64,000 nt of DNA from NCBI GenBank assembly GCA_026770705.1, contig JANJGN010000056.1, forward strand, positions 2,108,001 through 2,172,000, given 5' to 3'. Position numbers and translations under genes: made by a program. This DNA comes from Isurus oxyrinchus (lineage: Eukaryota). Shown here piece after piece: positions 3,359-50,763 of this stretch; the stretch's first letter is position 1; each line of letters starts with the position of its first letter. The notes below the pieces were generated by a model, which was not told where the DNA came from, did no database searches, and saw nothing but the letters and a program-made list of their open reading frames with translations.

Positions 3359-3404
3359 GTACGTTTATTTTCACAAACTCAGGCTAACAATAGGAATTTC
3401 TCTT

Positions 3405-3948: not shown

Positions 3949-4018
3949 ATGGGAGAACTGATACTTCTCCAGATAGAAGCCATTTACTACCCGATTCTCG
4001 CAGCTGTTGGTGTACCTG
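3949..4018 (+). CDS. GPR139/GPR142-like class A GPCR, copy A, coding exon 1 (MGELILLQIEAIYYPILAAVGVP)
   Basis: Acceptor ccatctcag at 3924, ATG at 3949, TM1-start motif IYYPILAAVGVP and donor CTG|GTAAGA at 4019. Its 70 nt (phase 1) join exon 2 at 12956 in frame. Not in the ORF track. Confidence 0.9.
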
Positions 4019-4534
4019 GTAAGAGCCTAAACACAATCAGTGGACGTATAAATGAATATTGACTTTCTTCTCAAATGGTGTTGCTGGTAACGTGAAACTG
4101 TTCCTTTTCTGTTGGAGAGTTATCAAAGTTTAGGTGTCACGTTAACTGATGTCTTACTGTTGCTTCATCTTTCATGCATCATTCTAGAGTGTTGACACCG
4201 TATTTATTCTTTGGGGAATTTCTTGAATTTGGGTGCGCTCTGCAATAATTGTCATGACCAAGTGCAGACCGTCTTTAAACTTGGAGATAAGACGTGTCTA
4301 TGAAAATCAATGCAAGGGCAAATTCGCATTCTCCAGAATTCAGCTTGAACTATTTGAAAGTGTTTGCTCACGGTTTTCCCCTGTTTTCCAATATCGCAAG
4401 CAACAGGATCCCTGTCAAATCACGTACTTTTTAACAGCGATATTTTTACAAATCAGTGTGAAGTTACGAAATCTGGAAACTTGGCTGAATCACAATGCTG
4501 TGTGTGATTAAGACATTCCGAAGTCTTACTCACT

Positions 4535-4938
4535 TGTATATTGATACAAATGATTTTCAACAGCCTTTGTTCACGACCACGTTGATGGAATTACTTAAAG
4601 TAAGCGTGATTTGTGCTCTTTAAGCTTCCATAGACATAATGTTAACAATGACCGGATTGTATTATTTTGTGGATTTTAGCTGAGGTATAAATTTCGTTCA
4701 GGACACAGGGGGCTACAACAATGTTGCTCCTGGAAAAAGTGGAATTGAATCTTTTTACATTTTCCTCGTGAATCAATTTGACATCTTTTCTTAAAGGTTC
4801 TGCTTGTGGAAGTGCAGAATTAATTTACTAAGACATTGGAACATTAGCCGAGAACTTTGTTCTGAAGTCCTGGCGCCGGAAGCAAATCGTTAAACATCTA
4901 TCTCAGCACGGAGATTTCAACTGACTGAGCCATAAGTG
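4535..4938 (-). mobile_element. Degenerate tRNA-derived DeuSINE (SacSINE1-like)
   Basis: gaggtataaatttcgttcaggacacagggg...atctttttacatt...actgactgagccata matches the reverse of the Deu domain plus tRNA-head layout. Confidence 0.6.
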
Positions 4939-5159
4939 GCCCGATTTTGAAACACCTACGCACCCCAAGTAGTAATTTGGTTCTGCATATTCTGCTCCAT
5001 TCAATTTCTCGCCCTCCACTACCTGCTGATGTAAATCAAACTTGCAAGTACAATTGATTTGTATTGAGGATTGAAATTAGTTGGATTAAAGCATTTTCGG
5101 ACTCCCCTGTCTCTTTTTGAATCTCGCATTGCTAAGTGACATGCAGGTTCTGACAAAAG

Positions 5160-5665
5160 AGCATAGAGGCAGAGGCAGTGGGAGCACAAGTTAACAATTT
5201 GGCCACTTGAGCTTGTTCAACTACTCAATTATATCATGGCTGTAAACATGCATTCAATTCATTTCCTTGCACTATCGCATATCTCTGGACGCACTTAACA
5301 TTTAGAAAATGGTTCATCGCTCTGCCTTCAACATTCCCAATGACTGAGCCTCTGCCGCTGTTGGGAGAGATAATTTCAAACATTCGCTGCTCTCTGAGTG
5401 AAGAAATTCCCCCTCATATCGGCCCTAAATGCACACCTGTTATTCTGATACTGATTCTCATGATATTAGACACATCAGCCAGGGGCACATCCCTCCAACA
5501 TCTATAACATCGAACCCTGTAAGAACGGTCTATGATTCAGTGAGATCATTTCTCATTTGGCAAAGCTCCAGAAAGTATAGGTTCAGTCTCGTCAATGTCA
5601 CCACATTGGAATATCCCAGCTAACTCCCAGTAATTCAAGGACTTATCTGGTTAACAATCATTGTA
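5160..5665 (-). mobile_element. CR1-type LINE 3' fragment
   Basis: ggagcacaagttaacaatttggccacttgagcttg...ctctgagtgaagaaattcc is typical reverse-strand CR1 3' sequence. Confidence 0.65.
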
Positions 5666-5689
5666 GCACAGCTATAACAACAGCGCAAA

Positions 5690-6200
5690 ATCTCACGCCA
5701 AAAGGAGAATTTGGAATGCCTGTCCTGCACCACAACCATCACCATAATAATGCCACATGAAAATTGAGGAGTTGGAGATAGATTGGGTTTGGAATTGCAA
5801 ATTATGGTTGTGCACATCCCTGGTCTAGCATATGGCACAAATTGCCTAATGAATGCCCACTTTTATGTTGCTGATCAGATTGAAAACTACCCCATATCGC
5901 ACAAAGGTGGTGTCACATTATACGATGGAGGAACTTTCCAATGTGAAGGCCGACTACGTCTGCACAAGGAGCATGCGGTGGCCTATCCTATCATTCCTGT
6001 AATGGGCAGGTGCATATGTTGCTTGACGTTTGGTGAGGCGTGTTCATTTCGGTCTTTGCACCTTGTTGGTTCCCTGATCACCTTCCAAAGACCCAATCCA
6101 GCGGTTATATATCTGACTCGGCCTGATCGGCCGTTAGTGGTGCTACCGAACCTGTCTTGGTCATAGACGATGACAGCACCTGCATACAATAGTTTTTGTT
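5690..6200 (-). mobile_element. Family A LINE, endonuclease fragment
   Basis: ORF 5983..6216(-) contains FGSTTNGRSGRV...GLWKVIREPTR (APE domain QxVxxPTR motif). Confidence 0.7.
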
Positions 6201-6240
6201 TCTTGCCACTCACCAAAACTTCGTTTTATGCCCCACAAGA

Positions 6241-6537
6241 GTGCATAGGTTAAGCGTGAGGTGCAGGTAATTTAGGAGGGATCGGAGGAAAAACCTTTTT
6301 CCCCTGAGTTTGTTGAATGTCTCTAATGCGCTGCCTGGCAGGGTGGTAGAGACAGATTGCCACACATCCTTTAAAAAGTAACTGGATGAGCACTTGGCAC
6401 ATCAATACCTTCAAAGCTATGTGTCAATTTCTGGTAAATGTAATTAAGTAGTCAGGACAGGTGTTTTGCACATGCCAGTGCAGACTCGAAGGGCTGAAGT
6501 GCCTCTTGTGCACTGTGATTCTGTGATTCTATGATTC
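6241..6537 (+). mobile_element. CR1/HER1-type LINE 3' end
   Basis: Ends gaagggctgaagtgcctcttgtgcactgtgattctgtgattctatgattc, i.e. the CR1 (GATTCTRT)n terminal octamer. Confidence 0.85.
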
Positions 6538-6867
6538 GTCCATGGATGCTCATTCATTCATCATCTGAGGGGAACGGGAGGTGGTCAACATAAGGGAATA
6601 TTCAGTGCCCGTGTTTTACATAACGCCATGAGGTTGAATATAAGTTTCCCGTGCTCTTAGTGCTCTGAAAAATGGTGCTCACTGAACGGAGAGGCGTGGC
6701 CAAATGATATTTAGGAAAGCAACAATGGAATTGGGAGAAGCCTAAATTCCCGTTTTCGATGAAGTTATTTTCCTCAGGTGTTGGCTGATGGTTTAGATGA
6801 ACTTTAAAACCAGTAAGAATAGCTATTCGCTAGAGATAAACAGCTTGAATCATTAAAGCTAAGCATT

Positions 6868-8420
6868 AGTTGTCAAACAAGCAGCCTGATTTGCCGTGGA
6901 TTAGTTCAATATTGTTGAATATTATTGAAGCAGAACTCATCCAGAAAACTGTTGTTTATTCCAGTAGTTTCCTGAATTGTGCATTATAGATGGAGTGAAG
7001 GTTTTGCAGAGTCAGGCGGGTATGTCCTCGCCACGGAATTCCCAGTCCTGACCTGCGCTTCTAGTCACAGTTTCTAGTCAATGGTTTTTCCGTGGATCTT
7101 CAAAATGGAGAATTAAACGATGGTGATACCATTAAATATCTGTGAGAAATTGTTGGACACTTTTTTTTCGTAGGTGGTCATTTCCTGTCGGTTGTGTGTC
7201 TAATATGACTTGTCAGTTTTCAGCAGAATCCTCGATATTGCCCAGGTCTTGGTGGACACGGGCAAGATTTCTTCAGCATCTGTTGAGTCGCGAATGGTTT
7301 TGAAATTTAAACAATCATCAGCGGACACTCCTGCCACTCACTCTGCTACCATAAGACTTCCTCTGGGCATATGTTGCAAAGAAGTTAATTGATGAAGCAG
7401 ATTAAGGTGGTTTGACTCAGGACACTGCCCATAGGATCTCGTGCAGTGCTTTCATCGGGATGAGATGATTCACCTGAGAAACAAAACAAAAAAAGTCTTC
7501 TTTGTGATAGGTATGACAGCAATCAATGGAGATGCTTCCCCATTATGTTTATTGACCTGAATCCTGATATATCTCCTTCTTACCACAGAATGTCAAATGT
7601 TGTCTTGATGTAAATAACATCCGCTCTCCACTCCCCTCGTGAATTCAGCACTTTTGACCATGTTTGGTTTAAGGCCGAACCGAGAGTTGGAGCTCATACG
7701 AAGCAGAAAATGGTCGTCAGTGAGCATGTTGCTCGCTAGTACGTGGCGTTTGAAAGCAATGCCCGTGACCGATTCCATCAATATGTTCATGATGAAGAAT
7801 AGGGGATAAGGGGGTAATTATTGGTCCGATTTGACGAGTTTTGTTTTTGTGGATAGACCCAGCTGTGTGACTGCTTACATTTTCGCTTAGATGCCAGTGT
7901 TTTAGCTGTCCTATACCAGGTTATCTAGGAAGATTTATTCGGGAGCACTGATCACCCGGACGATTGCCGGTATCTGACAGGACCCATAGTCTCTGCATCA
8001 TCCCGTTCCTTCAGTCATTCCTTTAGATGAAGGGCAGTGAATCACATTAGCTCAAAATTGGCATCTGTGACGCTCTCATCCTCAGAAGGGGGACGGGATG
8101 ATTCACCCTCCCTTCATGTCAGTCTGAATATGGCAGCAAGTTCTTGAGCCATGTGTATGCACTGATGTGCTGCGCCCCACAATCATTGTCGATGTGGATG
8201 TTGCTGGGGTGTCCACCACCCTTGATTCGCTGCTCTGTCCAACATCATTCAAGATGGCATGAGCAGAGCTTCAGAGCTAAGTTAACGTTATTTGCTGGTT
8301 GGATCAATTAACCCTGTCAATCACATTCTGCATCCACTGCTCTGCATGCAAGTCGTCCTGTCTCACAATTCACCAGGTCAAAGCCCCGTTGTTAGGTATG
8401 ATTGCAGCAACTCCTGATAT
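6868..8420 (-). mobile_element. Family A LINE, RT region (intronic, antisense)
   Basis: Reverse-complement similarity to the RT region at 62650-63760 and 15450-16050. The paralog ORF 36632..36985(-) reads LPSIYNAQFRNVVE...IQGKAGCLIG. Confidence 0.75.
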
Positions 8421-8700
8421 ATGACAGGTGTCGGCAAAAGTAATCCTTTCGAGCACTTCACTTCGAAAGCCTGGAAGGATACGAGCAGAAGCGGCATGGG
8501 AACACTCTTATTGCAGAATCGTTTCCAAGTCACACCCCATACTGACTCCGAGACACATCAGCATTCCCTGAATGCCACTGGATCAAACACCTGTAAATCC
8601 ATCACTCGTAACACTGTGTGTGCAACCGCATCACATGGACAGCAAGAAGAATAATATCTGCTCTCGGAAAAATGCTGATCCTACCAATGATTCCCCAAAA
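8421..8700 (+). mobile_element. Family A LINE 3' end (sense), abutting the antisense RT piece
   Basis: gcctggaaggatacgagcagaagcggcatgggaacac...ccaagtcacaccccatactgact...aaatgctgatcctaccaatgattcccc parallels 16150-16450. Confidence 0.65.
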
Positions 8701-11539
8701 AGAAAGTGCTGCATAATGCCGGATCTATGAATGTGTTTGTCACTTGATACGAAAGGACGTTCCTGTATGTTTACTTTGTAGCACTAAACTAAGACAGACT
8801 GCAACATGCATGTTTTAATTCAAATCCTTTCGCAGTAGTCTGGTTCCCAACTGAGGATGTATATCTTCAATTCGTTCCTGAATACCTAAATCTGTAGCCG
8901 AAACGATGGGCTGGACATTTCTCCTCAAATTGCAGCTCAAACCTACACACTCACACTCCCCATCACCCCTCGCACCCACCCCGCTTACCACCCCCACTCC
9001 CCAGCATCACCCACCCCCATCGAAAATGTTGAATCGGCACAAATATCAGATACCTGCATCGAGTATAATGGTGTCGTGTACTTAGTTCTCCCCAATTGCA
9101 GATGGAGAATGGGTGGGTCAACCATTCTCAAGTTACTTATTAACAGGTTATTGAGCTTGTCAGCGAACCAATCGTATGTTGTCCTGTTTGGTGCATTGCA
9201 TTTGCTGTGGCTCGGATGAGAAAAATAAGTGTTTTTGTGCAGCTATTGTGAGACGGGCAAAGATCGGTGGGGAACTCCTGCCTCCAGGAGCATGATCGAA
9301 TGTAGCAGCAGATTGTGCTGGAGAAGATGGCTGCATCTTCAAGCTTTATTTCTCACTTTTTCGTTTCTTGCCTGAGCATTGAATGAAAAGTATTTTTCAA
9401 AAAAATGTCTGAGTATAGGTTGTTTTGAGCTTGTAGCCATAGCAACTCTCTGTTCGCAGCATTACACTCTGCTGCATGAGGTCCAGGCGTTCACTGCCGA
9501 TTGGATGCGGACACCATTTTGCATCTTTCATTGCCTCTTCCCCGGAATTGGATGGATTGACGAGGTGGAGGCCGCCTAAGGGAGGATGAGTGGGACAAGA
9601 GGGAGTAGGCCACTCATTTTGCATTTACCCAATATCACAATGCCGAAAAACGTGAAATCCAGTCTGATGCCTGCTTGATGTAACGTTGCTTTATGAACGT
9701 AAATCACGTTCAGCGTTTTTAACCTGCACCGGGTGTCTTGGCCTGTCTTTCTACTGTTAGTGTTGCTACCGAGTCTGCAGCAATGTGTCATAACCAAAAA
9801 CACTGTTCAGTGGATCTCACTCTGTTTTGCTTTAGCCAGAGCATTCACAACGTCCCTAAAATGAATTTGAACTTTAGGATCTGCATTGCATACAAATGAT
9901 GCCACAGATAAATGTTAATTTGTGCTTACATTACGAAGCAAACAACGCTCTTGAAGTGACATAGACTTAGGAAAGTGGCAGAAACTAAATCGCTCTGTAG
10001 TTCATCAGACTGGGGTATTTACAGAAACCACTCCAAGAGGCATATAGGTCAATGTGCATTGAACCTGCTCTATGTTTCTTTTCACAAATAGCAAATCAAT
10101 AAGAGAAGCAGATTGCATTTTCAGATAGCAATTGTGCAGCCTATATAAATGTTCAATTCTCGAGTTATTTGATCAGGGGCTTATGTGGATAATATACTTG
10201 ATATCTGTACACTTAATTTCACAGATAAAATGATGTATAATGGTTTGGATAATTCACCGTTGAATTCGTTAGAAAATTCTGTGGTTCATTCCTGGGGCAT
10301 TTCAATGTTTAATGTAGAAGAAACTTCTAGAAACATGTGGATAATTTATTGGATATTAGTTTTGATAATTAATTTGTTCCAACATTTGCTGCTTCAGTAT
10401 ATAATTGTTAAAATTACTGTCTTTTTCCTATTTTTAACTGTTTCCTTATTTACAGTTCTGTCAAGTACAGGTTCAAGTGCTAATAATCTGGTTAACCATC
10501 TCTGTTTAATTCAAAAAAGCGAATTGATATTTATGACTCTGAGTGAAAATTCATGCCATTGTAAGGATATCAATACTAGATTTGTTCAGGGAATAATTTG
10601 TTTATGATAAATGAACATAAATCTAACTTACAAGCTGATACAGAAATGTAAAATTCTGTTTATCTTTATCTGACTAATACCACTTTCTTTTTCCAAAGCT
10701 CATGTAAAAAATTAATGAACATCCTCAGGAATTAATATGATCCAAAATGTTAATTCAACACCCCGTTTATAGACATTGCTCCATTGCATTGATGTTTTCC
10801 CAAATACAAGTTTGCGGAAGCTACACTTTCTGTCTGCTCCAGGTTGCAAAGCCTTCAAAGCACTTAGTACTTCATTGAACTCATCCCTTCCTTGTGAGAA
10901 TGTGCATTTTATATTCCTGAATTTGGGCATCCTGAGTCTAACCAGAGATTTCATACGAAAATCTATTCTGTACCCTTGCAAGAGCCATGAAATCCTATCC
11001 TACACCATAGGCATCCGAACCACAAACACAATTTAGGAAGCGAACAATTACTTACTTTGGATATTAATTATTAGAGTTATTTAACTTGCTTTGAAATGCA
11101 GATAATAAATAAATGAACATGTGCATGAACTTAGTAAATGTATGGCAGCAATAAATAGGTTCATTGAGATTCAGTGAGAAACTCCATTCTTCAAAAATTC
11201 TACGGAGTTTTATTAGTTAAACAACAGAAACGTTGATGCAGGCACTAGTATCTGAGGCTCACGTCAATTTCGCTTGATTTATAAAGCTTATTGGATTTAA
11301 TCAGTAATTAGTAGAAATCTTTCAGTTTAGTCTTCTGTATAGTAACAGATCGTTGATTTAGATAGCTAATTCACAAAAATGTTCTTGCATTTTGAAAAAT
11401 AAATATGCATTTTACCAAATATTGCTAAAATTGAAGGATGGTATGATCCGAAACAATCTAAAATGAAAATAGCTGCAACGTATGATAATTTAACCATGCA
11501 TATGTTAGGAGTTAGATCATTATCATCAATTTTTCGACA

Positions 11540-12750
11540 CTTCATTGTTTTGCTCTTCTAATCATATATTAGACCTAAAAAAATCTATCTACTCAAATCG
11601 ATGGGCCCGTCACGGTCCATGTCGACTTGGAACTTTTGCCCTTGGTGTCCTGCAAGTGTCAGTGTTCAGCTTCACATTTCAAATCATTTCTCACAGATAT
11701 TGTGAATGACATGCAAGTGACTCCCTTATGCCCTTTCGGAAAAAAAAGTGCTTTGATATACAGCTCATCAATCAATGGGAACGTACCCCTGTCTCCCCAG
11801 AATAGATAGTTGATTTTAAACACACTGGAATCCCATCTTCGAATTGCTTACTACACTTTAACAATGTGTCTTGTATCGCTGCGAGTCCTATTGTCCCTGT
11901 TTTTTGCGATATCCATTCACTGCAATTTAAACTAGTCCGTCCAGAAAGAAGCGTGGTCCTGCACAATTCCCACTCTGCCTTCCCGTTGGCCAATAAATAT
12001 TTCACACTTAATCTGATACCTATGTCACTGTTCCCATTCGGCCATTAAACTACCCGCTTGATCAGCACCAAATATACACAGTCGGCAAAGAAATATTGCT
12101 TCACTTTTTTTCTGCAATGAATTTGCGATGCATTCACCTGACCTAAACCTTCACAATGCCCAGCCTGCATATTAATCTTCCATTACTGAGTTTGCCTTAA
12201 AAAAAAACCTGACTCATCTGCCCTCATCTCCTACCACAACGTTTCAATGAGAATCTGCATAAAAATGTCACCATGTTTTGATTCTCATTGGACCGGATCT
12301 GTGAAGTTTCCTGGGTAAACCCTTGTTCGGCCTCGTCTATGCTAGTGTTTCTTTGTAGCCCAGTGACCATTCTAACATATCCTGTGCAGTTAATATTCCA
12401 TCTTTACACTCCCAAGCGTTTAGAGTATGCCAATGCTGCTGGGCAACAATTTACGTACGAGCTGTGAGTCCTGTGTCACAGCAACCATTTCAAATACTTA
12501 CCGCATCCATAAAGCACGCAGCGCACATTGCACGACTACCTCTTCCAGAGTCTAACTCTGCTTTCCCAAGATTCCATTTTGCGTCTTTATTTCCCAAATG
12601 ATATTGCACCTTCACACATTAGTTGTCTCTTTACACCTCCTACTTACTATCTAAAGTTCAACATGCCGAGCCGTTTTTGTACCTTCAAATTGTCCACATC
12701 ACATTCTCGCTCAAGAAGCTCAATCGTTATTGCACACTAGTTGCCCAGTT
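11540..12750 (-). mobile_element. Old CR1-type LINE fragment
   Basis: Reverse-strand CR1-like C-terminal and RT segments, e.g. atttcaaatcatttctcaca and ttttttctgcaatgaatttg...attcacctg; heavily decayed. Confidence 0.5.
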
Positions 12751-12955
12751 TAAACTGATGATGTTCCTATCAAAAGAGGAATGATCATTTCCCTGTCCAC
12801 ATTTACTAAGTCCAATCCACATTTAGTATATGCTCATCTCGGGAAGCAGGTCCTGCATGTTTGGGTGAAATGCATGAGTCTTTGCTGCAACTGCAAGAGA
12901 AGTTGCCTTGTTCATCTGTGACGTCTATCTCCTTCTCTCTCTTCCTCACTTACAG

Positions 12956-13860
12956 GTAATGTTGTTGCGATTGTCATCCTTTCCAGAAGAAAGTGTGGTC
13001 TCTCCAAATGCATTACATGTTATATGATTGCAATGGCAGCGGCTGATCTCCTGTTTATTTGTACTGAAGTCATACTGAAGGAAATGCTGAATATTTATTT
13101 TCCGGATTCATTCTTGACCATGAGCACGGTATGCCATCTAATGGAGACATTGATTTATGTAGTCACTTCAGCCTCCGTCTGGTTGACATTGGTGTTCACC
13201 TTCGATCGTTTTGTGGCGATATGTTGTCTGGAACTGAGAAAAAAATATTGCACAGAGAAAACAGGTGTAGCTGTCATATCAGTAGTGAGTGTTTTGAGTT
13301 GTTTGACAAACATTCCCTGGTATTTTGCTTATGAATCTGCATATATAATTGGCAATGTACCTCGCGGTTGCAAACTAAAACAGACATTTTTCAGTTCTGC
13401 TGAATGGGCTGCATTTGATTTCTTTGTGCTAACTTTGACCCCACTTGTTCCATTCATTTTAATTTTGTTGCTAAATGTTTTGACGGTGAGACGTATTTTA
13501 GCCACCAGTAGAGTTCGCAGTGGTCTCAACGGTTGCTGCAATGGAGAGCATCACAATGATCCAGAGATAGAAAGACGAAGAAAGTCCATAATTTTACTCT
13601 TCAGTATAACCGGCAGCTTTATATTGCTTTGGACAACTCCAGTCGCATATGTTTTCTCTCTGCATACAACAATCATTTCATATTCTGGCACTAATGAACT
13701 TGGGTCAGTTGCAATCATGCTTGCGGTCCTCAGCTGCTGCACAAATACATTCATTTATGTGCTGACACAGTCTAGGTTTAGGGAGGAGCTGAAGAACGGA
13801 ATGCAATACTCTTTGAAACGGTGCGTAAAATTAGTCAAATTACAGCTGAAAACGAATTGA
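12956..13860 (+). CDS. GPR139/GPR142-like class A GPCR, copy A, coding exon 2 (spliced product 324 aa)
   Basis: Long pyrimidine tract plus tacAG at 12955, then an open frame GNVVAIVILSRRKCGLSKC...MAAADL (TM2), FTFDRFVAIC (TM3), IPW (TM4), ECL2 Cys, LVPF...LN (TM5), SFILLW (TM6), SCCTNTFIY (TM7), helix 8 FREEL, stop TGA at 13858-13860. Confidence 0.93.
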
Positions 13861-14015
13861 CATATGCAGGAGGACTTAAAAACTGTGCCTGAAGGGAGTC
13901 ACATTAGCAAAATACTTGAAGTGATGTATGCTGACTCTGGATAAAATTACATCCCAGGTGAAAATACTCTTTCATGGTGTAGTCTCAAATTGAACTCCTT
14001 TTCACTTTATTCTAT

Positions 14016-16460: not shown

Positions 16461-16546
16461 TGTTGTCTATGTTGCTGCACAACTACTGCACTTTCCAGTT
16501 GTCCACTCCTAGAACGATGCTCTACCACAGTCACATCAATGTTCCA

Positions 16547-16800: not shown

Positions 16801-16859
16801 CCAGCTACAGTACTAAACATATAACTAAATCTGACCTTACACCGAACATCCAACCCGGA

Positions 16860-26580: not shown

Positions 26581-26617
26581 AATACTGGGGATAGTCTGCA
26601 GTAATATCAAACCAAGA

Positions 26618-30795: not shown

Positions 30796-30814
30796 TCCAT
30801 TAGCCTGTGCAGCT

Positions 30815-36040: not shown

Positions 36041-36094
36041 CAATAGTTTTTGTTTCTGGCCACTCCCTAAAACTGTGTTTTTTGCCCCACAAGC

Positions 36095-41400: not shown

Positions 41401-41849
41401 AAAAATAAATAACCGTGTTAATTAAGTTATTAAATGTATGGCAGGAACAAATTGGTTCATTGCAATTCACTGAGAAACTCTTCTTCAAAATTCAACGGAG
41501 TTTTAGTAGTTTAGTTGAACAAAAGAGACCTTGTTGCAGCCATGATTATCCGAGGCTCACGTCAATTTCGTATGATTTATAAAGATTATTGGATTTAATC
41601 ACTAGTAAGTAGAAATGCTTCATTTAATCTTCAATATGATAACACAACTGTGAATTCCATGGCTAATTAACAAAAATGTTCTTGCATTTTGAAAAAGAAA
41701 TATTTATTTTACCAAATAATGCTAACATTCTAGGATGTTATGATGCAAACCAATCTGAAATACAAATAGATGCAAGGTATGTTAATTTAACTATGCATAT
41801 GTTAGGATTTAGCTCTTTATCATCGGGTAATACACACTTTGTTGTTTTC

Positions 41850-43020
41850 CTCTTCTAATCATATAATACACCTAAAATAATCTATCTACTCAAATCGATG
41901 TGCCTATCACAGTCCATGTCGACCTGGAACTTTTACACTTGGTGTCCTACGAGGGTCGGTGTTCAGCTTCACATTTCAATTCATTTCTCATGGTTACTGT
42001 GAATGAAACGCAAGTGACTCCCTTATACCCTCTCGGAAACTAAGTGCCTCCATCAACATCCGATCAATAAATGGGAACGTTCTCCTGTCTCCTCAGAATA
42101 GATAGTTGATTTTAACTATTGAAATCACATCTTCGAATTGCTAGCTCACCACACATTACCAACAATGTGTCTTGCATCGCTGTGATTCCTATTGTACCTG
42201 CATTTTGCGATATCCATTCATTACACTTTAAAACTAGTCATTCCAGAAAGAAGCGTTGCGTTGCGCCTTCCCGATGGCCAATAAATATTGCACACTTAAC
42301 CTGATAGCAATGTCACCGTTCCCATTCGGCCACTCAACTGCCGCCTTGATCAGCATCAACTATACCCAGTCGGCAAAGCAATATTGGTTCACTTTGTCTG
42401 CAATGAATTAGCGCTGCATTCACCTGATTATACCTTCACAGTGCCCAGCCTGCATATTAATCTTTCATTACTGAGTCTGCCTTAAAACATCTGACTCATC
42501 AGCCCTCATCCGTTACCACAACGTTTCACTACGAATCTGCATAAATATGTCACCTTGTTTTGATGGTCATTAGACGGCATCTGTGTGGACTCCTGGGTAA
42601 ACGTTTATACGGCCTCGTCTATGCTAGTGTTTCTTTGTAGCTCAGTGACCATTCTAACAGGCCCTGTGCAACTACTATTCCATCTTTACACTCCAATCGT
42701 TTCAGAGTATATCCATGCTGCCGGCCAGGATTTTAACTTCGAGCTGTCAGGCCTGTTGCGCAGTAACCCTTCCAAAAACTTATCACATCTATAAACCACG
42801 CAGCACACATTGCAGCACTACCTCTTGCAGAGTATAACTCTACTTAGCCCATTTTGCAGCTTCATTTCCCAATTTATATTTCATCCTCACACATGAATTA
42901 TCTCTTTACAACCCCAATTTAATATTTAAAGTTCAACATTCCCAGCCGTTCTTGTACCATAAAATTGTCCAGAACAGATTCTCCCTCCAAATGCTCGATC
43001 GTTGTTGCAAAGTAGTTGCC
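41850..43020 (-). mobile_element. Old CR1-type fragment (paralog of 11540-12750)
   Basis: Colinear with copy A. Confidence 0.5.
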
Positions 43021-43234
43021 CCCAGTTTAAATTGACGATGTTCCTATCAAAAGAGGAATGAACAATTCCCTGTCCACATGTACTAAGTCCAATCCACATT
43101 TAGTACATGCTCGTCTCGGGAAGCAGGCCCTGCATGTTTGGGTAAAATGCATGAGCCTTTTCTGTAACTGCAAGAGAAGTTGCCTTGTTCATCTGTGACG
43201 TCTATCTCCTTCTCTCTCTATCCCTCACTTACAG

Positions 43235-44142
43235 CTAATGTTGTTGCGATTGTGATCCTTTCCAGAAGAAAGTGTGGACTTTCCAAATGCATTACACTCT
43301 ATATGATGGCCATGGCAGTGGCTGATTTCCTGTTTATTTGTACTGAAGTCATACTGAAGGAGATGCTGGGTGTTTATTTTCCGGATTCATTCTTGACAAT
43401 GAGCACGGTGTGCCATCTAACTGAGACGTTGATTTGTATATTCACATCAGCCGCTGTATGGTTAACAGTGGCGTTCACCTTCGATCGTTTTGTGGCGATA
43501 TGTTGTCAGGAGCTGAAAAAAAAATATTGTACAGAGACAACAGGCGCAGCTGTCATATCAGTAGTGAGTGTTTTGAGTTCTTTGACAAACATTCCCTGGT
43601 ATTTTGCGTATGAACCTGCATATATAATTGGCAATGTATCTCGCGGTTGCTTCCTAAAACCGACATTTTTCATTTATGCTGAATGGGCTGCATTTGATTG
43701 GTTTACCCTTACTTTGACCCCATTTGTTCCCTTCATTTTAATTTTGTTGATAAATGTTTTGACGGTGAGACGTATTTTAGCCGCCAGTAAAGTTCGCAGG
43801 GGTCTCCGCAGTTGCTACAATGGAGAGCATCACAACGATCCAGAGACTGAAAGCCGAAGAAAGTCCATCATTTTACTGTTCAGTATAACCGGCAGCTTTA
43901 TGTTGTTCTGGGCAGCTCCGGTTTTATTTTATTTTATCACCCTGCGTACAGCAATCATTTCATATTCTGGCACTAATGAACTTGAGTCATTGGGATTCAT
44001 GCTTGGGCTCCTCAGTTGCTGCACAAATACATTCATTTATGTGCTGACACAGTCTAAGTTTAGGGAGGAGCTGAAGAAAGGAATGCTGTGCCTTATGGAA
44101 TGGTGCGTAAAATTAGTCAAATTACAGCTGAAAACCAATTGA
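43235..44142 (+). CDS. GPR139/GPR142-like class A GPCR, copy B, coding exon 2 (spliced product 325 aa)
   Basis: Pyrimidine tract plus tacAG at 43234. ANVVAIVILSRRKCGLSKC, MAVADF, FTFDRFVAIC, IPW, SFMLFW, SCCTNTFIY, FREEL, stop at 44140-44142. The first ~18 aa of track ORF 43180 are intron read-through. Confidence 0.93.
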
Positions 44143-45704
44143 CATATGCAGGAGGACAGAAACATCGTGCTTGAAGGGACTAACATTAGCAAAATACTTG
44201 AAGCAATTTATGGCCACTCTGGACAAAATTATATCCCGCCTAAAAATACTCCTTTATAGTATGGAGTCAAATTGAACTCCTTTTCACAGTATACTGTAAA
44301 CAATGGTGAACATGAGGTGTGATGACAATAATACAAGAAAATTATTGAACAGCCCGTGTTATTATTGCAGACTTTGAGAGGATGAATTGTGATGCCCGGT
44401 TCTGTAACAATAGAGCTCCTTACAACAGTTGCTCTGGACAGCAAAAGAACACCCCAAACATCACCAGAAGTATCACAATAACTCGAACAAGTGTAACTTA
44501 GAAAAACGTCACAAATACTCTTCAATGTCTCTTCTGGGTCGAATAATGGCGGTTTTCAGAACAGGTTTCAGGAAACCTGGCACCCTCGAAATATCGGACT
44601 GTTGCACAATGAGCTGCTGCTCAGAGTTCCATATACCTCACACGATTAAAACAAGTAACGCCTGGCCATCAAGTGCTTTGAAAAAGACCGGGCATTGGCG
44701 TAATTGTCACATGGTACATTTTATCACTCATTCGCAAGATCAATAGGACTTAGAGACGGTTCCATATCTTGGCTTCGGATTTCCTTACGATTTCTTTGAA
44801 AGCTTGCATAGCTCAAACTTAATTATTCACGAACATAGGAGCTGCCACCTCTCCACATGCTCATTCACAACAGTCTGTGTTTCACGTTTTCTGGTCCTTT
44901 CTCACACACGGCCAGCAAATGGTTGTTACCACAATTCACAGATGCTGTGGCGATTGAAAATTATTAACTTGAAATCCACTCATCAAAATAACGAGTGAAG
45001 CTTCAAACAGATATCCTCTCCAATTCCAGGCTATGAAACATCCACTCGCTCATGGCGCTACCTTAAACATCTTCCTTTGTATTCCTATGTATTTTGAATG
45101 TGATCAAAAAATTCTATTCTTCTTTTCACATATTCTTCTCGTTTAATCTCTTTTACTTTACTTAAACACAGTTCGTAGAATGCAACCATATACTTTTTAG
45201 AACAAAGAGCAGATAAGTTGACCTACTCTTTCTTTATTGGGTCTCTGAAGCGACGATGCAGCCTTCTCCTTGTGCATGCTGTCTGGATCATTCGGTTTTC
45301 TCAGATACTAACACAAAATCGCCTTGACCTTTCCTAGTTGACCAGCCTAATCATCCGGGAAAATGGTTGGCCAGAAGAACGGCCAATTAAAATGGCAAAT
45401 GTACACTAGCGTTAGATACAAACTTGCACCCGCCATCACGGAATAAATTATCATTAAAAAAAATGATTTGGTCATTGCATGAGGCGCACAGCAAGAAAAC
45501 GATTTATTGAAAACCTCTCATTGCTCTTACAGCAAAGTGAACGTGAACCGCCTTTTCGAGCAGCTACAGTGAATGTGATATATTCGAGCAGGATACTTAG
45601 GACTTGACTTAATAAATACCCACACCGACAGCTAGGCTAGCACTCTTTTCCAAATAGTTGCTCTTTGACAGTTTTGCACCTCCACTTTCTAATTATCAAC
45701 CCTA

Positions 45705-46710
45705 GCTGCTGAGCTCCCAGTCCTTTTAGTTCCTTGGGGAACCTGAGTTCCTCAGGGTTGTGACTGAGGCCCAACCATGTTTAGCTCCATCATCAAGGAT
45801 CAGCACTCCATTGCAAAGTCAGGAATGGGGATGTTCGTTGATGATGCACAATACTCAACACATTTCCAGATTCCTGAGATAATGAGGCAGCCCATGGCCC
45901 AATGAAGCATATTCTGGACAATGTATTGTCTTTGGCTGACAATTGGCAAACAACGTTCATACCAGACAAGTGCCAGGAAATGACCGTCTCCAAAAGAGTT
46001 AATCTAAACAATACCTGTTTTCGCTCAATGGCATTGACAAATGTCCCACGATCAGCATTGTAACTGTTATCACTGACCGGAAAGTGAACTGGATTAGGCG
46101 TATAAACACGATGTCTAATAATCCACTTCAGAGGCGACAAGTAACACACTTCCTGGTTCCCAAAATCCTATCGACAATCTTCAAGGGAAAAGAAAGGATT
46201 GTGATGCTATATTCTCCACTTGCCTAAATACGTGCAGCTCTAACAAAACCCAAGAAGCTTGACAGCATCAAGGACAAAGCAGCCGCTTGATGGACACTAC
46301 ACCGACACACATTTTGTTCCTCCACCGCCGATGAACAATGGCAGCAGTCCGTGCCACCTATAAGAAGCAATTCAGGGATACATGAAGGCTCCTTAGGCAG
46401 CACTTTCCAAACTCACAACCGGTACCACCTAGCAGGATAAGGGGCAGCAGGTTACCGGGAACACCAATACCTGGAAGATCACCCTCAAGCTATTCGCAAC
46501 TCTGATTTGGAAATATATCGCTGTGCCTTCAATATCATGTGTCAAAATCCTGGAAATCCATCCCTATCAGCACTGTGGGTGTACGGGCACAGCAGGGACT
46601 GCTGTGGTTCATGAAGCAGCTCATCGCCATCTTCACAAGCATAACTATTTATCGGCAAGAAATGATGTGCCAGCGATTGAAGCCAAAATAACATATATGA
46701 ATAATAAAAA
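45705..46710 (+). mobile_element. Family A LINE RT to 3' tail (paralog of 15434-16460)
   Basis: gagttcctcagggttgtg (VPQG), gggatgttcgttgatgat (MFVDD), caaggacaaagcagccgcttga. Confidence 0.85.
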
Positions 46711-46794
46711 AGTTGACTATGTGGCTCCACAACTTCTGCGCTTTCATATTCTCCACTCTGAGAACCATGCTCTACCACAGTCACATCAATGTTC

Positions 46795-47085
46795 CAGCTT
46801 CCTCTGACACTCTGCTCTAGCTACTTACCTCCTGCTCTTTTATTAAATCTCTGCTCTGGGAGAACAGCCCGTGTAACCTTTCAGTCGGTGCTTTGATTAT
46901 CTCGCTCCCGATCTTTCTACTTCTCTCCTCTGACAGCTCAGATACCGCTCTTTTTAAATCTCTCCTCTCACAGCCCAGTTCCCGCTCAATTTAAGTCCCG
47001 ATGTCTCAACCCACCGCTCTTTTTAAAAATACCACCTGTTGCCGCTCAGCCTCCATCTCTCTCTAATTCAGTTCTCTCACTGTTC
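46795..47085. repeat. Degenerate ~40-nt minisatellite (paralog of 16547-16800)
   Basis: Recurrent ccgctctttttaaatctctc. Confidence 0.6.
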
Positions 47086-47149
47086 AGCTGCAGTACCAAG
47101 AATATAACTAAATATGACTTTACAGCCAAGCGTCCAGCCCGGAATTGGA

Positions 47150-47830
47150 GACAGCTGAGATTAATTGAGAATGATCACGGATTTGTAAAAGGCATCCCTT
47201 TGACTAAGTACATCCTGGAACAACATAGTTTGCAATCTAATGTCACAACTGGGAAAATTAAGGATGATAATACAGGAGTGGTTGGCTAACTGGATTTTGA
47301 GGTATTAATTGACAACCTACTGCAGATAGAGCTGGTAAGAAAATTTAGGCTTATGAAAGAGGGCAGAAGCGGGGTGTCTCTATCCAATTGGATACATTTC
47401 GGTAACACACCGAAAACATAAACTGTTGGTAATCGTTTTGTTTCAGTCTGCATGAAGTTAGCCACTGGTTTTCCCCAAGAATCTATGTTGGGCTGGAGTT
47501 CGTTTTGCTGTCAATAAACCAGTTGGATCTTAGAATACAGCACAACGTCTCAAACCGTGTGAATTATACACACAAAGTGGGCTGGGTGTTAACCAGTGAG
47601 GATGATACGAATCCATTGCAATTGGACACGGAGAAACGAGCAGAATTGGCAGGGAATTAGCAGATGCAATTAGATGCATTGCAGGGTAAAATAATTAATG
47701 TTGGCTGATGGGGTAGAGAGGGGTAATGGAAGCAGAATGACACTGTTAGAAAGAATGTGACTGAATAGGGTGAGCAGGGGGACAAGCTTCGATATCTGAA
47801 TGTGGTGGACACAGCCATGCTGAGGGTATG
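47150..47830 (+). mobile_element. Old CR1 RT fragment (paralog of 16860-17560)
   Basis: cacggatttgtaaaaggc (HGFVKG), actggttttccccaagaatctatgttgggc (GFPQESMLG). Confidence 0.65.
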
Positions 47831-48104
47831 GCTCATCGTGGTGAAGGCGACTGGCACCGCACTTTGGGGGTGGGGGGAGGGGGGGTGATGTGGGGCGCGC
47901 TGTGCTGACTTTTGAATGTGGCGACCTTTCCTTTCTGGGTAAGATTGGAGGAGTCTGTCTAACTGAGGTAGATGAGTGACCCTATTCGTATTTAGAATGC
48001 AATGGCTTCCACGTGCAGTGACAGATAGAAACAGAGGAAATATCGCTCGGATGTGGAAAAAAAAGGCAGAAAAAAATGAGAAAATGATAAGAACCTGAAA
48101 CGTT

Positions 48105-49505
48105 CTCTGTTTACCTGAAGAGTCAGAGCTCCATCAAGTTGAGGACCAATTGGAAGAAGCTTTGAGGATGTCAAGGACACGATCTGCAATCTGCTTGAGG
48201 AACTTCATGCACTTCATCAAGCGTGGCTCAGTCACCCTATTACTTTCCAAACTGGCTGGCTCATAAATCACTTTGCTGCTGGACTGGCTCAGTAGCAGCT
48301 GGTGTGGGAACCAGCAAAAAGGAACACAAATCTTCGTTACCTTCTCCTCACCAATTTTTCTGTTTTAGATGCATGTAAACATGAAAGCATAAGTAAGAGT
48401 TAGCACCTCACAATTGTATTGGGGACTAACTCCCATGCTCACACTGAGATATCCTCCATCCTATAACGTGACTCTATGAGCGCGTTAAATGGAATAGTTA
48501 TACTATTCTACCAACTGGAAAATGGCATCCATTATGTGCCGTGGGAGAACAATGGCAGCAGCATTGTATATAACCACAAACTGTAATCCCTTGAACCTGC
48601 ATAAACCTCACGTTGCAATTAATATCAAACTGTAGCTAAACACTGCTTGTCAGAAGAATGCGGGCAGTGGGGGGTGAGAGTCTGATGTGGGATGCTGGCA
48701 TTTGGGAACACTGCCAGACATTTCTTAACGTGAATTGAAATACTTTCAAAAACACGCTGCAAAGCTGCAACAAATTGAAACTTAATTTACAAACATCCAA
48801 AGAACCATGTGATATGCTGACCAAAATGATCCCAAAATAAACGGACCAGATGTTAAATCATCAGTTTTTCCACATGAGTGAGTATGAATAAAAACACAGC
48901 GAACTGAAGGTGGAGGCTGCACAAACATTCCCAACCTCATTGATGGGGGAGCTGAACACATGACCGCATATGACATGGCAGAAATATTTGCAAAAATTCC
49001 AACCAAAGGTCGCGCATGGATGATCCAAATAGGCAACACGTTTTGTCCACAGTATCACAAATGCCAGTCTTCAGCCAGATAAAATCACTCTACGTGCTAT
49101 CAAGAGAATGCTGAAGGCACTGGATACTGCTAAGAGTAAGGACCCTGAAAAACCGCTGGCATATTACGGAGGACGTTTGCTTCCCAGCGGCTAAAACACT
49201 CGAATTTACCTGGAAATGTAGACAAGTGCTCTGGTTTGTTCAGTCCACTAATTTAAAAAGCAATCCAAGTCGACAAAATACGACCCCATTAAGGTACTCT
49301 CGATCATCTGAAGAAAATGCTGGTGGAGGCCGTTGACAATGTTTCCAATTGACATTAATTCAGCAATAAATTGTTCGCTGATGCTCAGTTTGGAATCTGC
49401 AAGGATCCCTCAGCTGCTGACCTAGTTTCAAACCCGGAGGCACATATGCGCAAATGAGGTAAACTCTTGAGGTGAGAGTGAGAGTGACCGCCTTTGGAAT
49501 CAAGG
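48105..49505 (+). mobile_element. Family A LINE endonuclease to RT N-terminus (paralog of 18005-19225, longer at the 5' side)
   Basis: ttggaagaagctttgagg (LEEALR), ggaacttcatgcacttcatcaagcgtggctc (GDFN-HHQEWL region), gtgagagtgaccgcctttggaatcaagg (VRVTAFGIK). Confidence 0.75.
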
Positions 49506-49881
49506 CGAGAATTTACCGTTCTTTCACTGCTGGCCTTGTTCCACTCTGCCATGACTATGTTCCCACATCCAGGCTGCTCTTTTTAGGTGGCCAGGAAATG
49601 AATTGTCAGCGGAATGCTGGCATTTATCAAACCGCCCAAAAACCTGTGACTCCACATGTTGTATTGCACCTCAATATTATTTACCGTTTGACAATCGATT
49701 TCATAGTCATGTTATCGCTACCTAAGAAACATAAAGTTGGAACTGGTAAAATTATGTATGATTTGCAAATGTATTACTGGATGTAATAGCACATTTGGAA
49801 ATCATAAGGAAGTCATCAAGCAAACTGGTAACTTTGCTTCTTGTCTGATTACAATTGTTCTTCCGATTCTCTGCCTTGTAG

Positions 49882-50763
49882 CTAAATTGGTGACGACAGA
49901 ATTCTGTCGCGGGGTAAGTCTGGGCTATCGAAATGTATCACTCGCTACCTGGTGGCCATGACAGGGGCGCATCGACTCGTCATTATCCTCGACATGATAT
50001 TACCACACATTCCAATTGTTTTCCAGAAGCAGCTTCATTTCCTGAAGTACATTACTGTGTGTAATAGCTATGCCGTTCTGAGTTATGCAGCCACTAACTG
50101 TTCTGTCTGGTTCACTGTAACGTTCACTTTTAATCGATTTACAGCCATCTGTTGCCGGAAACTTAAATGTAAATATCGCACCAGAAAAACTGCGACTGTC
50201 GCCCTGGGAACAGGGACTGGTCTGAGCTGCACAAAGAGCATGTTGTGGTATGTTATGGTAACAGGCCTGTGCTGAGGAACGTCCCCTGGTTTCGTTAGTT
50301 ACGCGGGGGTTCTTGGTTGTCTCAGATCTGAGTAGCAATGGTGTTCACACATGGAATTCGAAATCCAGTAGTACCATTTACCCTGATTCTGGTGGTCATT
50401 GTTGACACGGTCAGACACATTTTAGTGAGCAGCTGAGCCAGGAAGAGACTCAGGCCTCACAACACTGGGAAGATCCCCAGAGACCCAGGAATGTAAAGTC
50501 GAAAGAAAACCATTATTATATACTTTGCAATTTCAGCGAATTCCATCTTGTTATGGTCAGTGTTAATGCTTTATTCTATATGGACCGGATGTAATATTTG
50601 GGGTATCGATCTCTAATGACAGATGTGCTGGTGCTGGAATTGGGTTTAATGCTGCAGCATCTTAGTTGCTGCACGGACACTTGCCATCACCAGGTTCAGA
50701 GCACAGTCAAGAATGTATTCAAACATCGCTTTCTTCTAATTGTTCAGTTCACTAAACAATTGA
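49882..50763 (+). pseudogene. GPR139-like GPCR pseudogene (second subfamily), main exon, copy B
   Basis: Acceptor ccttgtAG at 49881 and a 1-nt frameshift near 49898. ORF 49952 reads ...YAATNCSVWFTVTFTFNRFTAICCRKLKCKY. Stops at 50296, 50434 and 50494; TM7 remnant LELGLMLQHLSCCTDT in ORF 50598. Confidence 0.9.

What the first reader, a model, noticed from the sequence alone, without database searches (positions are those of the whole stretch)
3949..50763. Birth-and-death cluster of GPR139/GPR142-like receptors: candidate unrecognised chemosensory (or immune) receptor repertoire of cartilaginous fish
Seen: four related class-A GPCR loci within 47 kb, all on the same strand; two are intact and two are dead, from two distinct subfamilies, multiplied by segmental duplication. 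Established: mammalian GPR139 and GPR142 are single-copy receptors activated by aromatic amino acids (L-Trp/L-Phe). Sharks have very few canonical OR/TAAR/V1R genes yet respond to amino acids. Tandem expansion, pseudogenes, short N-termini and variable pockets are the usual signature of chemosensory repertoires. Inference: this is one tile of a lineage-expanded orphan family that may act as an additional amino-acid or peptide sensing system. Tissue and ligand cannot be read from DNA.
Basis: partly seen in the sequence, partly recalled or inferred. Interest (0 to 1): 0.85.

Follow-up and report, generated by a model that had tools for sequence, protein, structure and literature searches.

The report
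Duplicated shark GPR139-like receptor genes
A stretch of shark DNA was copied in tandem, giving two working and two dead copies of a receptor gene family that has grown very large in sharks and rays and whose ligands and tissues are still unknown.

Summary
A ~25-kb segment (1149-26090) is repeated in tandem at 30837-56377, ~81% identical. Each unit carries an intact class-A GPCR gene of two coding exons split by a ~9-kb intron: A1 (3949-4018 + 12956-13860, 324 aa) and A2 (33845-33914 + 43235-44142, 325 aa). Each also carries a dead locus of another subfamily, B1 and B2.

B1 and B2 share two stop codons, so they record one death copied as a passenger, not two deaths.

The genes belong to a clade annotated "probable GPR139" in many elasmobranch species. 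I found no paper describing it. Human GPR139 is its nearest solved structure. In my tree the clade is separate from a conserved single-copy GPR139-like gene that sharks also keep, and sister to a small salamander group. Canonical GPR139/142 could not be added.

Across 62 members the intracellular half is conserved and the pocket half is hypervariable. The GPR139 agonist-contact positions rank among the most variable, so aromatic-amino-acid sensing cannot be inferred by homology.

No RNA data were obtainable, so the chemosensory or immune role is untested. The scan had already flagged this family on other DNA of this genome (e.g. s1-864206).

The parts
1149..26090 (.). Unit 1 of the tandem segmental duplication
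   Evidence: blastn of the window against itself: five collinear blocks, 24733 bases aligned to 30837-56377 at about 81% identity; repeat families at 29.9-30.3 kb spacing
30837..56377 (.). Unit 2 of the tandem segmental duplication
   Evidence: non-coding mismatch 0.166-0.187, 6-9 gap events per kb
3050..3250 (+). Candidate core promoter of A1: O/E-like site at 3161, homeodomain-type CTAATGG at 3183, TATAAATA at 3203-3210. The copy for A2 has its TATA at 33101.
   Evidence: 93.5% identical between units against about 83% background. Alignment read. Motif scan: 3 of 34 TATAAA sites on the + strand have both other motifs within 110 bp; two of these are A1 and A2. Inferred; no transcript data.
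3949..4018 (+). A1 coding exon 1 (23 codons + 1 base; MGELILLQIEAIYYPILAAVGVP), followed by a GTAAGA donor
   Evidence: N-terminal HMM E 2.7e-13; 20 of 23 residues equal to the N-terminus of Cetorhinus P0002
4019..12955 (+). A1 intron (phase 1, 8.9 kb), holds a LINE-like fragment at 6331-6530
12750..12955 (+). Last ~200 bases of the A1 intron, more conserved between units (93.5%) than the exon that follows. The counterpart in unit 2 is about 43030-43234. Unexplained.
12956..13860 (+). A1 coding exon 2 (2 bases + 300 codons + stop). With exon 1 the product is 324 aa.
19571..20426 (+). B1 pseudogene (other subfamily). Stops at 19667, 20098, 20158 and 20164; a 58-base deletion removes the DRY region; frame changes.
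33845..33914 (+). A2 coding exon 1 (MGDLIIHKIKAIYYPILAAVGVP + 1 base), same donor as A1
   Evidence: E 1.5e-13
33915..43234 (+). A2 intron (9.3 kb)
43235..44142 (+). A2 coding exon 2 (2 bases + 301 codons + stop). With exon 1 the product is 325 aa. This is the faster-evolving copy.
49901..50756 (+). B2 pseudogene. The stops at 50434 and 50494 are shared with B1. It also has a 1-base deletion in TM1 and three reading frames.

Best explanation
Shown:
- A ~25-kb segment was duplicated in tandem long ago. Neutral divergence between the copies is about 0.19 substitutions per site.
- The segment already carried one live receptor gene (A) and one dead relative (B).
- Both A copies have stayed open and are still constrained. 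A2 has changed about twice as fast as A1.
- A1 and A2 encode class-A GPCRs with almost no extracellular N-terminus.
- They belong to an elasmobranch-wide, greatly expanded clade related to GPR139.

Inferred mechanism:
- A small ligand binds in the transmembrane pocket. The receptor then activates a G protein through an intracellular face that is nearly the same in all members.
- The pocket differs from member to member. The family therefore works as a repertoire of many ligand specificities feeding one signalling route, in the way of ORs, TAARs, MRGPRs or FPRs.

Not shown: which cells use the receptors (nose, taste or solitary chemosensory cells, leukocytes, neurons) and what the ligands are.
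For: Gene structure and intactness.

Selection on the ORFs:
- Exon 2 has 1 gap event, in frame, against 6-9 per kb in the flanks.
- In a neutral simulation both ORFs stayed free of stops in 462 of 20000 runs with the observed 103 substitutions, and in 104 of 20000 at the flank rate. The chance of no frameshift is about 0.006-0.013.
- dN/dS of the intracellular half is 0.43 (bootstrap 0.24-0.84; 0.2% of replicates above 1). For the pocket half it is 0.78 (0.43-1.57).

Repertoire pattern across 62 members:
- Mean entropy is 1.63 bits at 122 outer positions against 0.69 at 159 inner positions (p 8e-17).
- 38 of the 45 most variable positions are outer.
- Positions 3.29, 3.32, 3.33, 6.51, 7x35 and 7x38 lie at the 95th-99th percentile of variability.

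Expansion. All 10 deep-branching representatives looked up are elasmobranch.

Clade:
- Family monophyletic 98/97.
- Sister to a salamander group 96/99.
- Separate from the conserved coelacanth-type gene (100/99).
- A1 and A2 are sisters (100/98), with Cetorhinus P0002 next (100/100).
Against: - No transcript evidence. The exon 1-exon 2 splice and the promoter are inferred from sequence only.
- Overall dN/dS is 0.60-0.77, and differences are nearly even over codon positions (31/32/41), so constraint is weak.
- A2 departs from 15 of 111 family-conserved residues and A1 from 11, against a median of 3 and a maximum of 11 in the other members. One copy may be on its way out.
- The dead B locus also shows lower divergence (0.130) than its flanks. 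Low divergence alone is therefore not proof of selection.
Confidence: 0.65

Rival explanations
1. One reading: the family is specifically a chemosensory (olfactory, taste or solitary-cell) receptor repertoire, detecting amino acids or peptides in water.
For: - Large tandem expansion with pseudogenes.
- Pocket-focused variability with a conserved signalling face.
- A TATA promoter with homeodomain-type and O/E-like sites upstream of both A genes. Other agents noted the same on other windows (s1-870781, s1-871174; not checked here).
- Canonical OR, TAAR and ORA repertoires of sharks are tiny (PMC11979771 and PMC6368271, passages).
Against: - No expression data.
- GPR139's L-Trp/L-Phe contact residues are not kept, apart from W6x48.
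- V2Rs already serve as the main shark olfactory family and as likely amino-acid receptors (PMC6368271).
- The catshark sensory-organ paper holds no occurrence of 'GPR139' (listing). Its supplements, which may hold expression values, were closed.
- The promoter is one independent observation here, because A1 and A2 are copies.
- The coding region is split by a 9-kb intron, unlike OR, TAAR and V1R genes.
Confidence: 0.3
2. The family is a non-sensory repertoire. Either it consists of leukocyte or other immune receptors (as with FPRs, chemokine receptors and MRGPRs), or of neuronal or endocrine peptide receptors that diversified along with their ligands.
For: - GPR139/142 are the deuterostome sister of protostome receptors for amidated aromatic peptides (PMC8557429, passages). 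Lineage expansions of such receptors occur; for example, the listing includes a Lymnaea genome paper on an expansion of FMRFamide-like receptors.
- After GPR139 and the PrRP receptor, the family profile next matches angiotensin, chemokine and other peptide receptors.
- An unchecked note places family members among antigen-receptor segments elsewhere in this genome (s1-900691).
- One catshark gene model fuses a member to an integrin alpha-X-like gene.
Against: - Nothing in this window points to immune or neuronal use.
- Scores to chemokine receptors are generic class-A similarity, 16-25 bits below GPR139.
- Peptide receptor families with a hundred or more members would need as many ligands, and none are known in elasmobranchs.
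Confidence: 0.25
3. The cluster is evolutionary debris. A1 and/or A2 are no longer functional and merely have not yet been hit by a disabling mutation. The family's size reflects neutral segmental duplication.
For: - dN/dS is 0.60-0.77, with near-equal differences over codon positions.
- A2 carries 29 derived changes against 13 in A1, and 7 private departures from conserved residues.
- Half of the loci in the window are dead.
- No RNA found.
Against: - Joint chance of both ORFs escaping stops is about 0.02, and of escaping frameshifts about 0.01, over this divergence.
- Inner-half dN/dS is 0.43, below 1 in 99.8% of bootstraps.
- All hallmark residues are kept in both copies (N1.50, D2.50, C3.25 and the ECL2 Cys, DRF, W6.48, N7.49, Y7.53).
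- Exon 1, both splice sites and the promoter block are also conserved.
Confidence: 0.1

Closest known systems
Human GPR139 (solved structures 7vug and 9m42) and its paralogue GPR142
   Same: - Best match among all solved GPCR sequences: single sequence 39.2 bits, E 5e-9; family profile 69.8 bits, E 2e-18, against 53.9 for the next receptor.
- A very similar TM1 motif (YY..L...G.PxN....IILS).
- A DRY-type motif and W6x48.
- Both lack the proline of NPxxY (NTxIY here, NFFLY in GPR139), read from the alignment.
   Different: - Only about 25% identical.
- Many copies instead of one.
- N-terminus of a few residues.
- P6.50 absent or shifted.
- Agonist-contact residues F3x33, H5x43, R6x51 and N7x38 (PMC5430874) are replaced and variable: C/Y, T/V, P/P and F/I in A2/A1.
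- Not shown to be in one clade with canonical GPR139/142.
Conserved single-copy 'GPR139-like' gene of jawed vertebrates (coelacanth P0225 type). It may correspond to the GPR210A/B orphans that PMC6504862 files under GPR139/GPR142; that correspondence is not checked.
   Same: It is GPR139-related (70.4 bits to human GPR139) and about 33% identical to A2. It lies in the same starred clade as the shark family relative to the protostome outgroups.
   Different: It is found at 46-66% identity to the coelacanth protein in sharks, sturgeon, bichir, teleosts, amphibians, turtles and squamates. It forms its own clade (100/99), which includes shark orthologues. The expanded family is therefore not its orthologue.
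Salamander 'probable GPR139' group (P0211: Pleurodeles, Ambystoma, Lissotriton)
   Same: Sister to the elasmobranch family in the careful tree (96/99). 34% identical to A2.
   Different: One cluster of 5 sequences from 3 species, with no sign of expansion. It sits on a long branch (1.33), so its placement should be retested.
Vertebrate chemoreceptor and other repertoire GPCR families (OR, TAAR, V1R/ORA; MRGPR, FPR)
   Same: Works like them in pattern: lineage-specific tandem expansion, pseudogenes, variability concentrated in the pocket, and a conserved signalling face.
   Different: Not homologous to any of them beyond class A. The coding sequence is split by a long intron. Expression is unknown.

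Membership tests
Class A (rhodopsin-like) GPCR, Pfam PF00001 | Significant match to 7tm_1 above the gathering score | tested here: met
   71.6 bits (A2) and 71.3 bits (A1) against a cut-off of 30.5. The B2 piece reaches only 18.2 bits; the B1 piece gave no hit.
Class A (rhodopsin-like) GPCR, Pfam PF00001 | Hallmark residues: N1.50, D2.50, the C3.25-ECL2 Cys pair, D/ERY, W6.48, NPxxY | tested here: met
   All present in A1 and A2, except that DRY reads DRF and NPxxY reads NTFIY. The numbering is recalled generic numbering anchored on the GPR139 alignment.
GPR139/GPR142 group | GPR139 is the closest characterised receptor | tested here: met
   Top hit in the PDB sequence search for the single protein and for the 64-row profile, with margins of 6.7 and 15.9 bits over the PrRP receptor.
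GPR139/GPR142 group | Falls inside the clade of canonical GPR139 + GPR142 in a phylogeny | not testable with these tools
   No canonical vertebrate GPR139/142 sequence could be fetched: they rank below the best 150, and one search returned only amphioxus proteins. Indirect evidence: the family sits with amphioxus 'GPR139' proteins against two protostome rows (100/99), and PMC8557429 (passage) groups Branchiostoma sequences with human GPR139/142.
GPR139/GPR142 group | Conserved aromatic-agonist pocket (F3x33, H5x43, W6x48, R6x51, N7x38; PMC5430874) | tested here: not met
   Only W6x48 is kept. The other positions are C/Y, T/V, P/P and F/I in A2/A1. Across the family they sit at the 88th-99th percentile of variability.
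GPR139/GPR142 group | Single-copy, conserved gene | tested here: not met
   At least 50 and 47 distinct 90%-identity clusters in two shark species among the best 120 hits (hand count). 101 clusters at 50% identity with E<=1e-30.
Chemosensory receptor repertoire (functional class) | Lineage-specific tandem expansion with pseudogenes | tested here: met
   In this window there is one duplication event and one death event.
Chemosensory receptor repertoire (functional class) | Sequence variability concentrated at ligand-contact positions | tested here: met
   1.63 against 0.69 bits, p 8e-17; 38 of the top 45 variable positions are outer. Between A1 and A2, 31 of 123 outer positions differ against 24 of 159 inner positions (Fisher p 0.025).
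Chemosensory receptor repertoire (functional class) | Expression in sensory cells, typically one receptor per cell | not testable with these tools
   No RNA run was listed as holding the stretch. 0 contigs were laid from the 4 runs laid. Supplements of PMC11979771 were closed.
Chemosensory receptor repertoire (functional class) | Homology to OR, TAAR, V1R, V2R, T1R or T2R | tested here: not met
   None of these appears in the 60 listed rows of 137 PDB matches. The best matches are GPR139 and peptide receptors.

The most novel reading that the evidence does not exclude
The elasmobranch GPR139-like clade is a previously undescribed vertebrate chemoreceptor family. It would descend from a peptide/amino-acid receptor lineage and be expressed in sparse subsets of sensory cells. 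That would explain how sharks and rays detect a wide odour space with almost no OR, TAAR or ORA genes.
Probability: 0.3. Interest if true: 0.85.

Novelty: new variant of a known kind. Interest (0 to 1): 0.55.

Why it matters
Sharks and rays are noted for chemical sensing yet have very small canonical odorant-receptor repertoires. A receptor clade with scores of members per genome is an obvious and directly testable candidate for missing sensory or immune recognition capacity. It has a hypervariable pocket and a conserved signalling face, it is annotated only by an automatic name, and it is absent from the papers I could search.

This window adds three things to the family picture:
- A clean gene model: a short first coding exon, a phase-1 intron of about 9 kb, and a candidate TATA promoter.
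- A dated example of how the family grows (segmental duplication with a dead passenger), with evidence that both daughters stayed under selection.
- The caution that GPR139's amino-acid pocket is not conserved.

The family itself was already flagged by this scan on other windows, so the window is a further instance and not a first sighting.

Tried and rejected
1. B loci as intronless retrocopies. The family HMM matched across the A-type intron site in B1, and the upstream translation looked hydrophobic, so I first took B for an intronless copy. I rejected this. B1 has a pyrimidine tract plus CAG exactly where A has its acceptor, in the same phase, so the "N-terminal" match is probably translated intron. 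No exon 1 for B was found.

2. A1 and A2 lacking a start codon. I first thought the exon-2 ORFs lacked a start, because the first ATG would remove TM1. Finding exon 1 about 9 kb upstream resolved this.

3. Gene conversion as the cause of low exon-2 divergence. This is not needed, because dS (0.15-0.18) is close to the flank divergence (0.19). It is not excluded for the conserved 200 bases before exon 2.

4. Expression. The look-up of sequencing runs listed 5 runs of the same species label, none holding the stretch. Read laying on 4 of them laid 0 contigs. This is no evidence either way.

5. Canonical GPR139/142 for the tree.

6. Other content of the window. Pfam on 10 other ORFs gave 0 families. 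NCBIfam gave 0. Rfam gave 0. TRF gave two small arrays.

7. Literature. Searches found no paper describing the elasmobranch expansion. PMC12208981 gave 0 matches for exon, paralog, duplicat and related terms. The preprint 10.1101/2024.11.25.625254 has no mention of GPR139 or sharks.

8. Trees.
- (quick, 64 rows) had long-branch warnings.
- For some searches (47 rows) I left out P0057, P0090, P0109, P0144, P0174, P0190, P0271, P0289, P0244, P0343, P0321, P0256, P0259, P0265, P0250, P0260, P0264, P0267 and the B2 piece. I added P0401 and P0404.
- One search did not finish the careful search. One search completed it.

Full report
WHAT IS IN THE WINDOW

The 64-kb window has no N and only two long ORFs that resemble each other: 13024-13860 and 43180-44142. 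Repeat finding and a self-blastn show one segment present twice in tandem. Segment 1149-26090 aligns to 30837-56377 in five collinear blocks, with 24733 bases at about 81% identity.

A family HMM was built from 81 of the 120 homologues (those of 305-345 aa) and run against every six-frame piece of the window. It gave 15 hits at E<=1. Thirteen are on the + strand and belong to four loci. Two minus-strand hits (E 0.17 and 0.95) I treat as noise.

GENE MODELS

The long ORFs begin without an ATG that could precede TM1. In other species the family starts with MG.........IYYP..A..GVP-VN.

That N-terminus is encoded about 9 kb upstream. Bases 3949-4018 read MGELILLQIEAIYYPILAAVGVP plus one base and are followed by GTAAGA. 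Bases 33845-33914 read MGDLIIHKIKAIYYPILAAVGVP with the same donor. An HMM of the N-terminus alone finds these two places at E 2.7e-13 and 1.5e-13 and nothing else better than E 0.81. In A1, 20 of 23 residues equal the N-terminus of the Cetorhinus protein P0002.

Exon 2 follows a pyrimidine tract and CACTTACAG, at 12956 in A1 and 43235 in A2. The phase-1 junction makes a Gly or Ala codon just before the TM1 asparagine. The products would be 324 and 325 aa, the modal length of the family.

The splice is inferred, not observed. Two gene models of other species switch to a different N-terminus exactly at this junction (P0007 and P0099). That suggests the intron position is general in the family.

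A block 700-900 bases upstream of the ATG is 93.5% identical between units against about 83% background. It holds TATAAATA (3203-3210), a CTAATGG homeodomain-type site and an O/E-like site. It is a plausible promoter. Because A1 and A2 are copies, it counts as a single observation.

THE DEAD LOCI

B1 (19571-20426) and B2 (49901-50756) match family members in two to three frames each.
- Both carry TGA at 20098/50434 and TAA at 20158/50494.
- B1 also has stops at 19667 and 20164 and a 58-base deletion that removes the DRY region.
- B2 also has a 1-base deletion in TM1.

The shared stops mean B was dead before the segment was copied. The window therefore records one birth (the duplication) and one earlier death.

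B belongs to another subfamily. It is 44% identical to A2 over 117 aa. Its best match among the 120 homologues is 61% (P0013/P0015). It branches elsewhere in the family tree.

ARE A1 AND A2 ALIVE?

Divergence between the two units:

| Region | Mismatch | Gap events |
|---|---|---|
| Non-coding DNA | 0.166-0.187 | 6-9 per kb |
| Exon 2 | 0.114 | 1, in frame |

- In a neutral simulation both ORFs stayed open in 462 of 20000 runs at the observed 103 substitutions, and in 104 of 20000 at the flank rate.
- The chance of no frameshift is about 0.006-0.013. Of the 142 flank gap events, 14 are multiples of three.
- Overall dN/dS is 0.60-0.77.
- Split by region, the intracellular half gives 0.43 (bootstrap 0.24-0.84) and the pocket half 0.78 (0.43-1.57). 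TM6-ECL3-TM7 gives 1.1 on 34 codons.

Both genes have therefore been kept. The constraint is weak, and positive selection is not demonstrated.

Polarised with P0002, A2 carries 29 derived changes, A1 carries 13, and 18 are ambiguous. A2 departs from 15 and A1 from 11 of 111 family-conserved residues; the other members have a median of 3 and a maximum of 11. Eight of these departures are shared by the two copies and are conservative.

Two cautions apply. The dead B locus also shows reduced divergence (0.130). The flank ts/tv of 0.8 suggests some alignment noise.

THE FAMILY

All of the best 120 proteins (of 2005 with E<=1e-3 among 8000 scored) are from 11 elasmobranch species, mostly named "probable G-protein coupled receptor 139". 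By my hand count 50 are from Heptranchias perlo and 47 from Heterodontus francisci.

An exhaustive search of 1.84 billion representatives gave 101 clusters at E<=1e-30. Ten deep-branching clusters that I looked up are all sharks, skates or rays. No holocephalan was seen among the names I examined.

Other notes of this scan mention the family 142 times in this genome (unchecked leads).

RELATION TO GPR139

Human GPR139 is the best solved match for A2 (39.2 bits; next is the PrRP receptor at 32.5). It is also the best match for the 64-row family profile (69.8 against 53.9 bits).

Scores against human GPR139:

| Query | Bits |
|---|---|
| A2 | 39 |
| Salamander protein P0211 | 53 |
| Coelacanth protein P0225 | 70 |
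| Amphioxus P0247 | 101 |

P0225 represents a conserved, apparently single-copy gene. It is found at 46-66% identity to the coelacanth protein in sharks, sturgeon, bichir, teleosts, amphibians, turtles and squamates.

In the careful tree (47 rows):
- The elasmobranch family is monophyletic (98/97).
- It is sister to the salamander group (96/99).
- The coelacanth-type gene forms its own clade with shark orthologues inside (100/99).
- Amphioxus "GPR139" proteins lie outside these groups, and two protostome rows root the tree.
- The join of the coelacanth type with the other two groups is weak (76/60).

Canonical GPR139/142 are missing from the tree because no tool could deliver them.

PMC8557429 (passages) places human and Branchiostoma GPR139/142 together as sister of protostome MIP, proctolin, myosuppressin and FMRFamide-type receptors. 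PMC6504862 (passages) lists extra fish and coelacanth orphans, GPR210A/B, under GPR139/GPR142.

My reading is that the family lies within the wider GPR139-related group but is not an expansion of GPR139 or GPR142 themselves.

THE POCKET

I used the printed alignments to GPR139 and the residue numbers of PMC5430874 (abstract and passages). The residues important for L-Trp, L-Phe and surrogate agonists map as follows:

| GPR139 residue | A2 | A1 |
|---|---|---|
| F109 (3x33) | C | Y |
| H187 (5x43) | T | V |
| W241 (6x48) | W | W |
| R244 (6x51) | P | P |
| N271 (7x38) | F | I |

Across 62 family members the outer half of the bundle and the extracellular loops have a mean entropy of 1.63 bits, against 0.69 for the inner half (p 8e-17). 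Of the 45 most variable positions, 38 are outer. Positions 3.29, 3.32, 3.33, 6.51, 7x35 and 7x38 sit at the 95th-99th percentile.

Sites that differ between A1 and A2 are the family's variable sites (p 4e-5). They are modestly enriched in the outer part (31 of 123 against 24 of 159, p 0.025). This partly supports the companion note s1-898033.

The outer/inner boundaries are my own, from recalled generic numbering, and no structure model was available.

The pattern fits a repertoire of ligand specificities that shares one signalling face. It gives no reason to expect aromatic amino acids as ligands.

FUNCTION

No RNA run holding the stretch was listed. Nothing could be laid from the four runs I laid. 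Tissue is therefore unknown.

The shark literature I could read gives V2Rs as the main olfactory family and does not mention this clade (PMC11979771 and PMC6368271, passages). Seven literature searches found no description of the expansion. Supplementary expression tables that might settle the matter were closed.

VERDICT

The amino-acid part is weakened by the non-conserved pocket. The family was already flagged by this scan elsewhere in the same genome.

Noticed in passing
window 12750-12955 and about 43030-43234: The last ~200 bases of the intron before exon 2 are 93.5% identical between the two units. That is more conserved than the exon (88.6%) and the background (~83%). It could be a splicing or regulatory element, or a conversion tract.
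   Followed up: partly
window 3050-3250 and 32948-33150: A conserved block with an O/E-like site, a CTAATGG homeodomain-type site and TATAAATA lies 740 bases upstream of the ATG. An acceptor-like site (…CCCATCTCAG) lies 24 bases before the ATG, so there may be a non-coding leader exon.
   Followed up: partly
window 6331-6530, 36173-36384, 59536-59750: A dispersed repeat, 73-77% alike, whose translation carries a ...WNALPG..LEA..L..FKK... motif. I recall this motif from LINE-type elements of fishes. Two copies sit in the A1 and A2 introns at matching places. Pfam gave no hit for the ORF at 36095-36388.
   Followed up: partly
window 59800-62000: A G+C-rich stretch (0.54) with overlapping open frames on both strands that translate to Pro/Gly/His/Thr-rich low-complexity peptides, plus a 30-base tandem array at 59933-59998. 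No Pfam or Rfam match.
   Followed up: partly
window 19571-20426 vs 49901-50756: The dead B loci differ by only 0.130 per site against 0.18-0.19 in their flanks, although they were dead before the duplication. This could be regional rate variation, conversion, or alignment noise in the flanks.
   Followed up: no
proteins P0225, P0283-P0400: A conserved, apparently single-copy GPR139-like gene is present from sharks to squamates and turtles. No mammal or bird appears among the 120 listed hits. Some models are fused to TMEM183A, so it may lie next to that gene. It may be the GPR210 of PMC6504862.
   Followed up: partly
proteins P0211, P0269-P0272: Salamanders (Pleurodeles, Ambystoma, Lissotriton) keep a long-branch GPR139-like gene that comes out as sister of the whole elasmobranch expansion.
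   Followed up: partly
proteins P0189, P0204: Some gene models fuse a family member to unrelated neighbours: a 'sodium channel alpha-like' model of 1244 aa in Mustelus and an 'integrin alpha-X-like' model of 790 aa in Scyliorhinus canicula. Many representatives carry 25-260 extra N-terminal residues. These are probably annotation run-ons across the long first intron.
   Followed up: no
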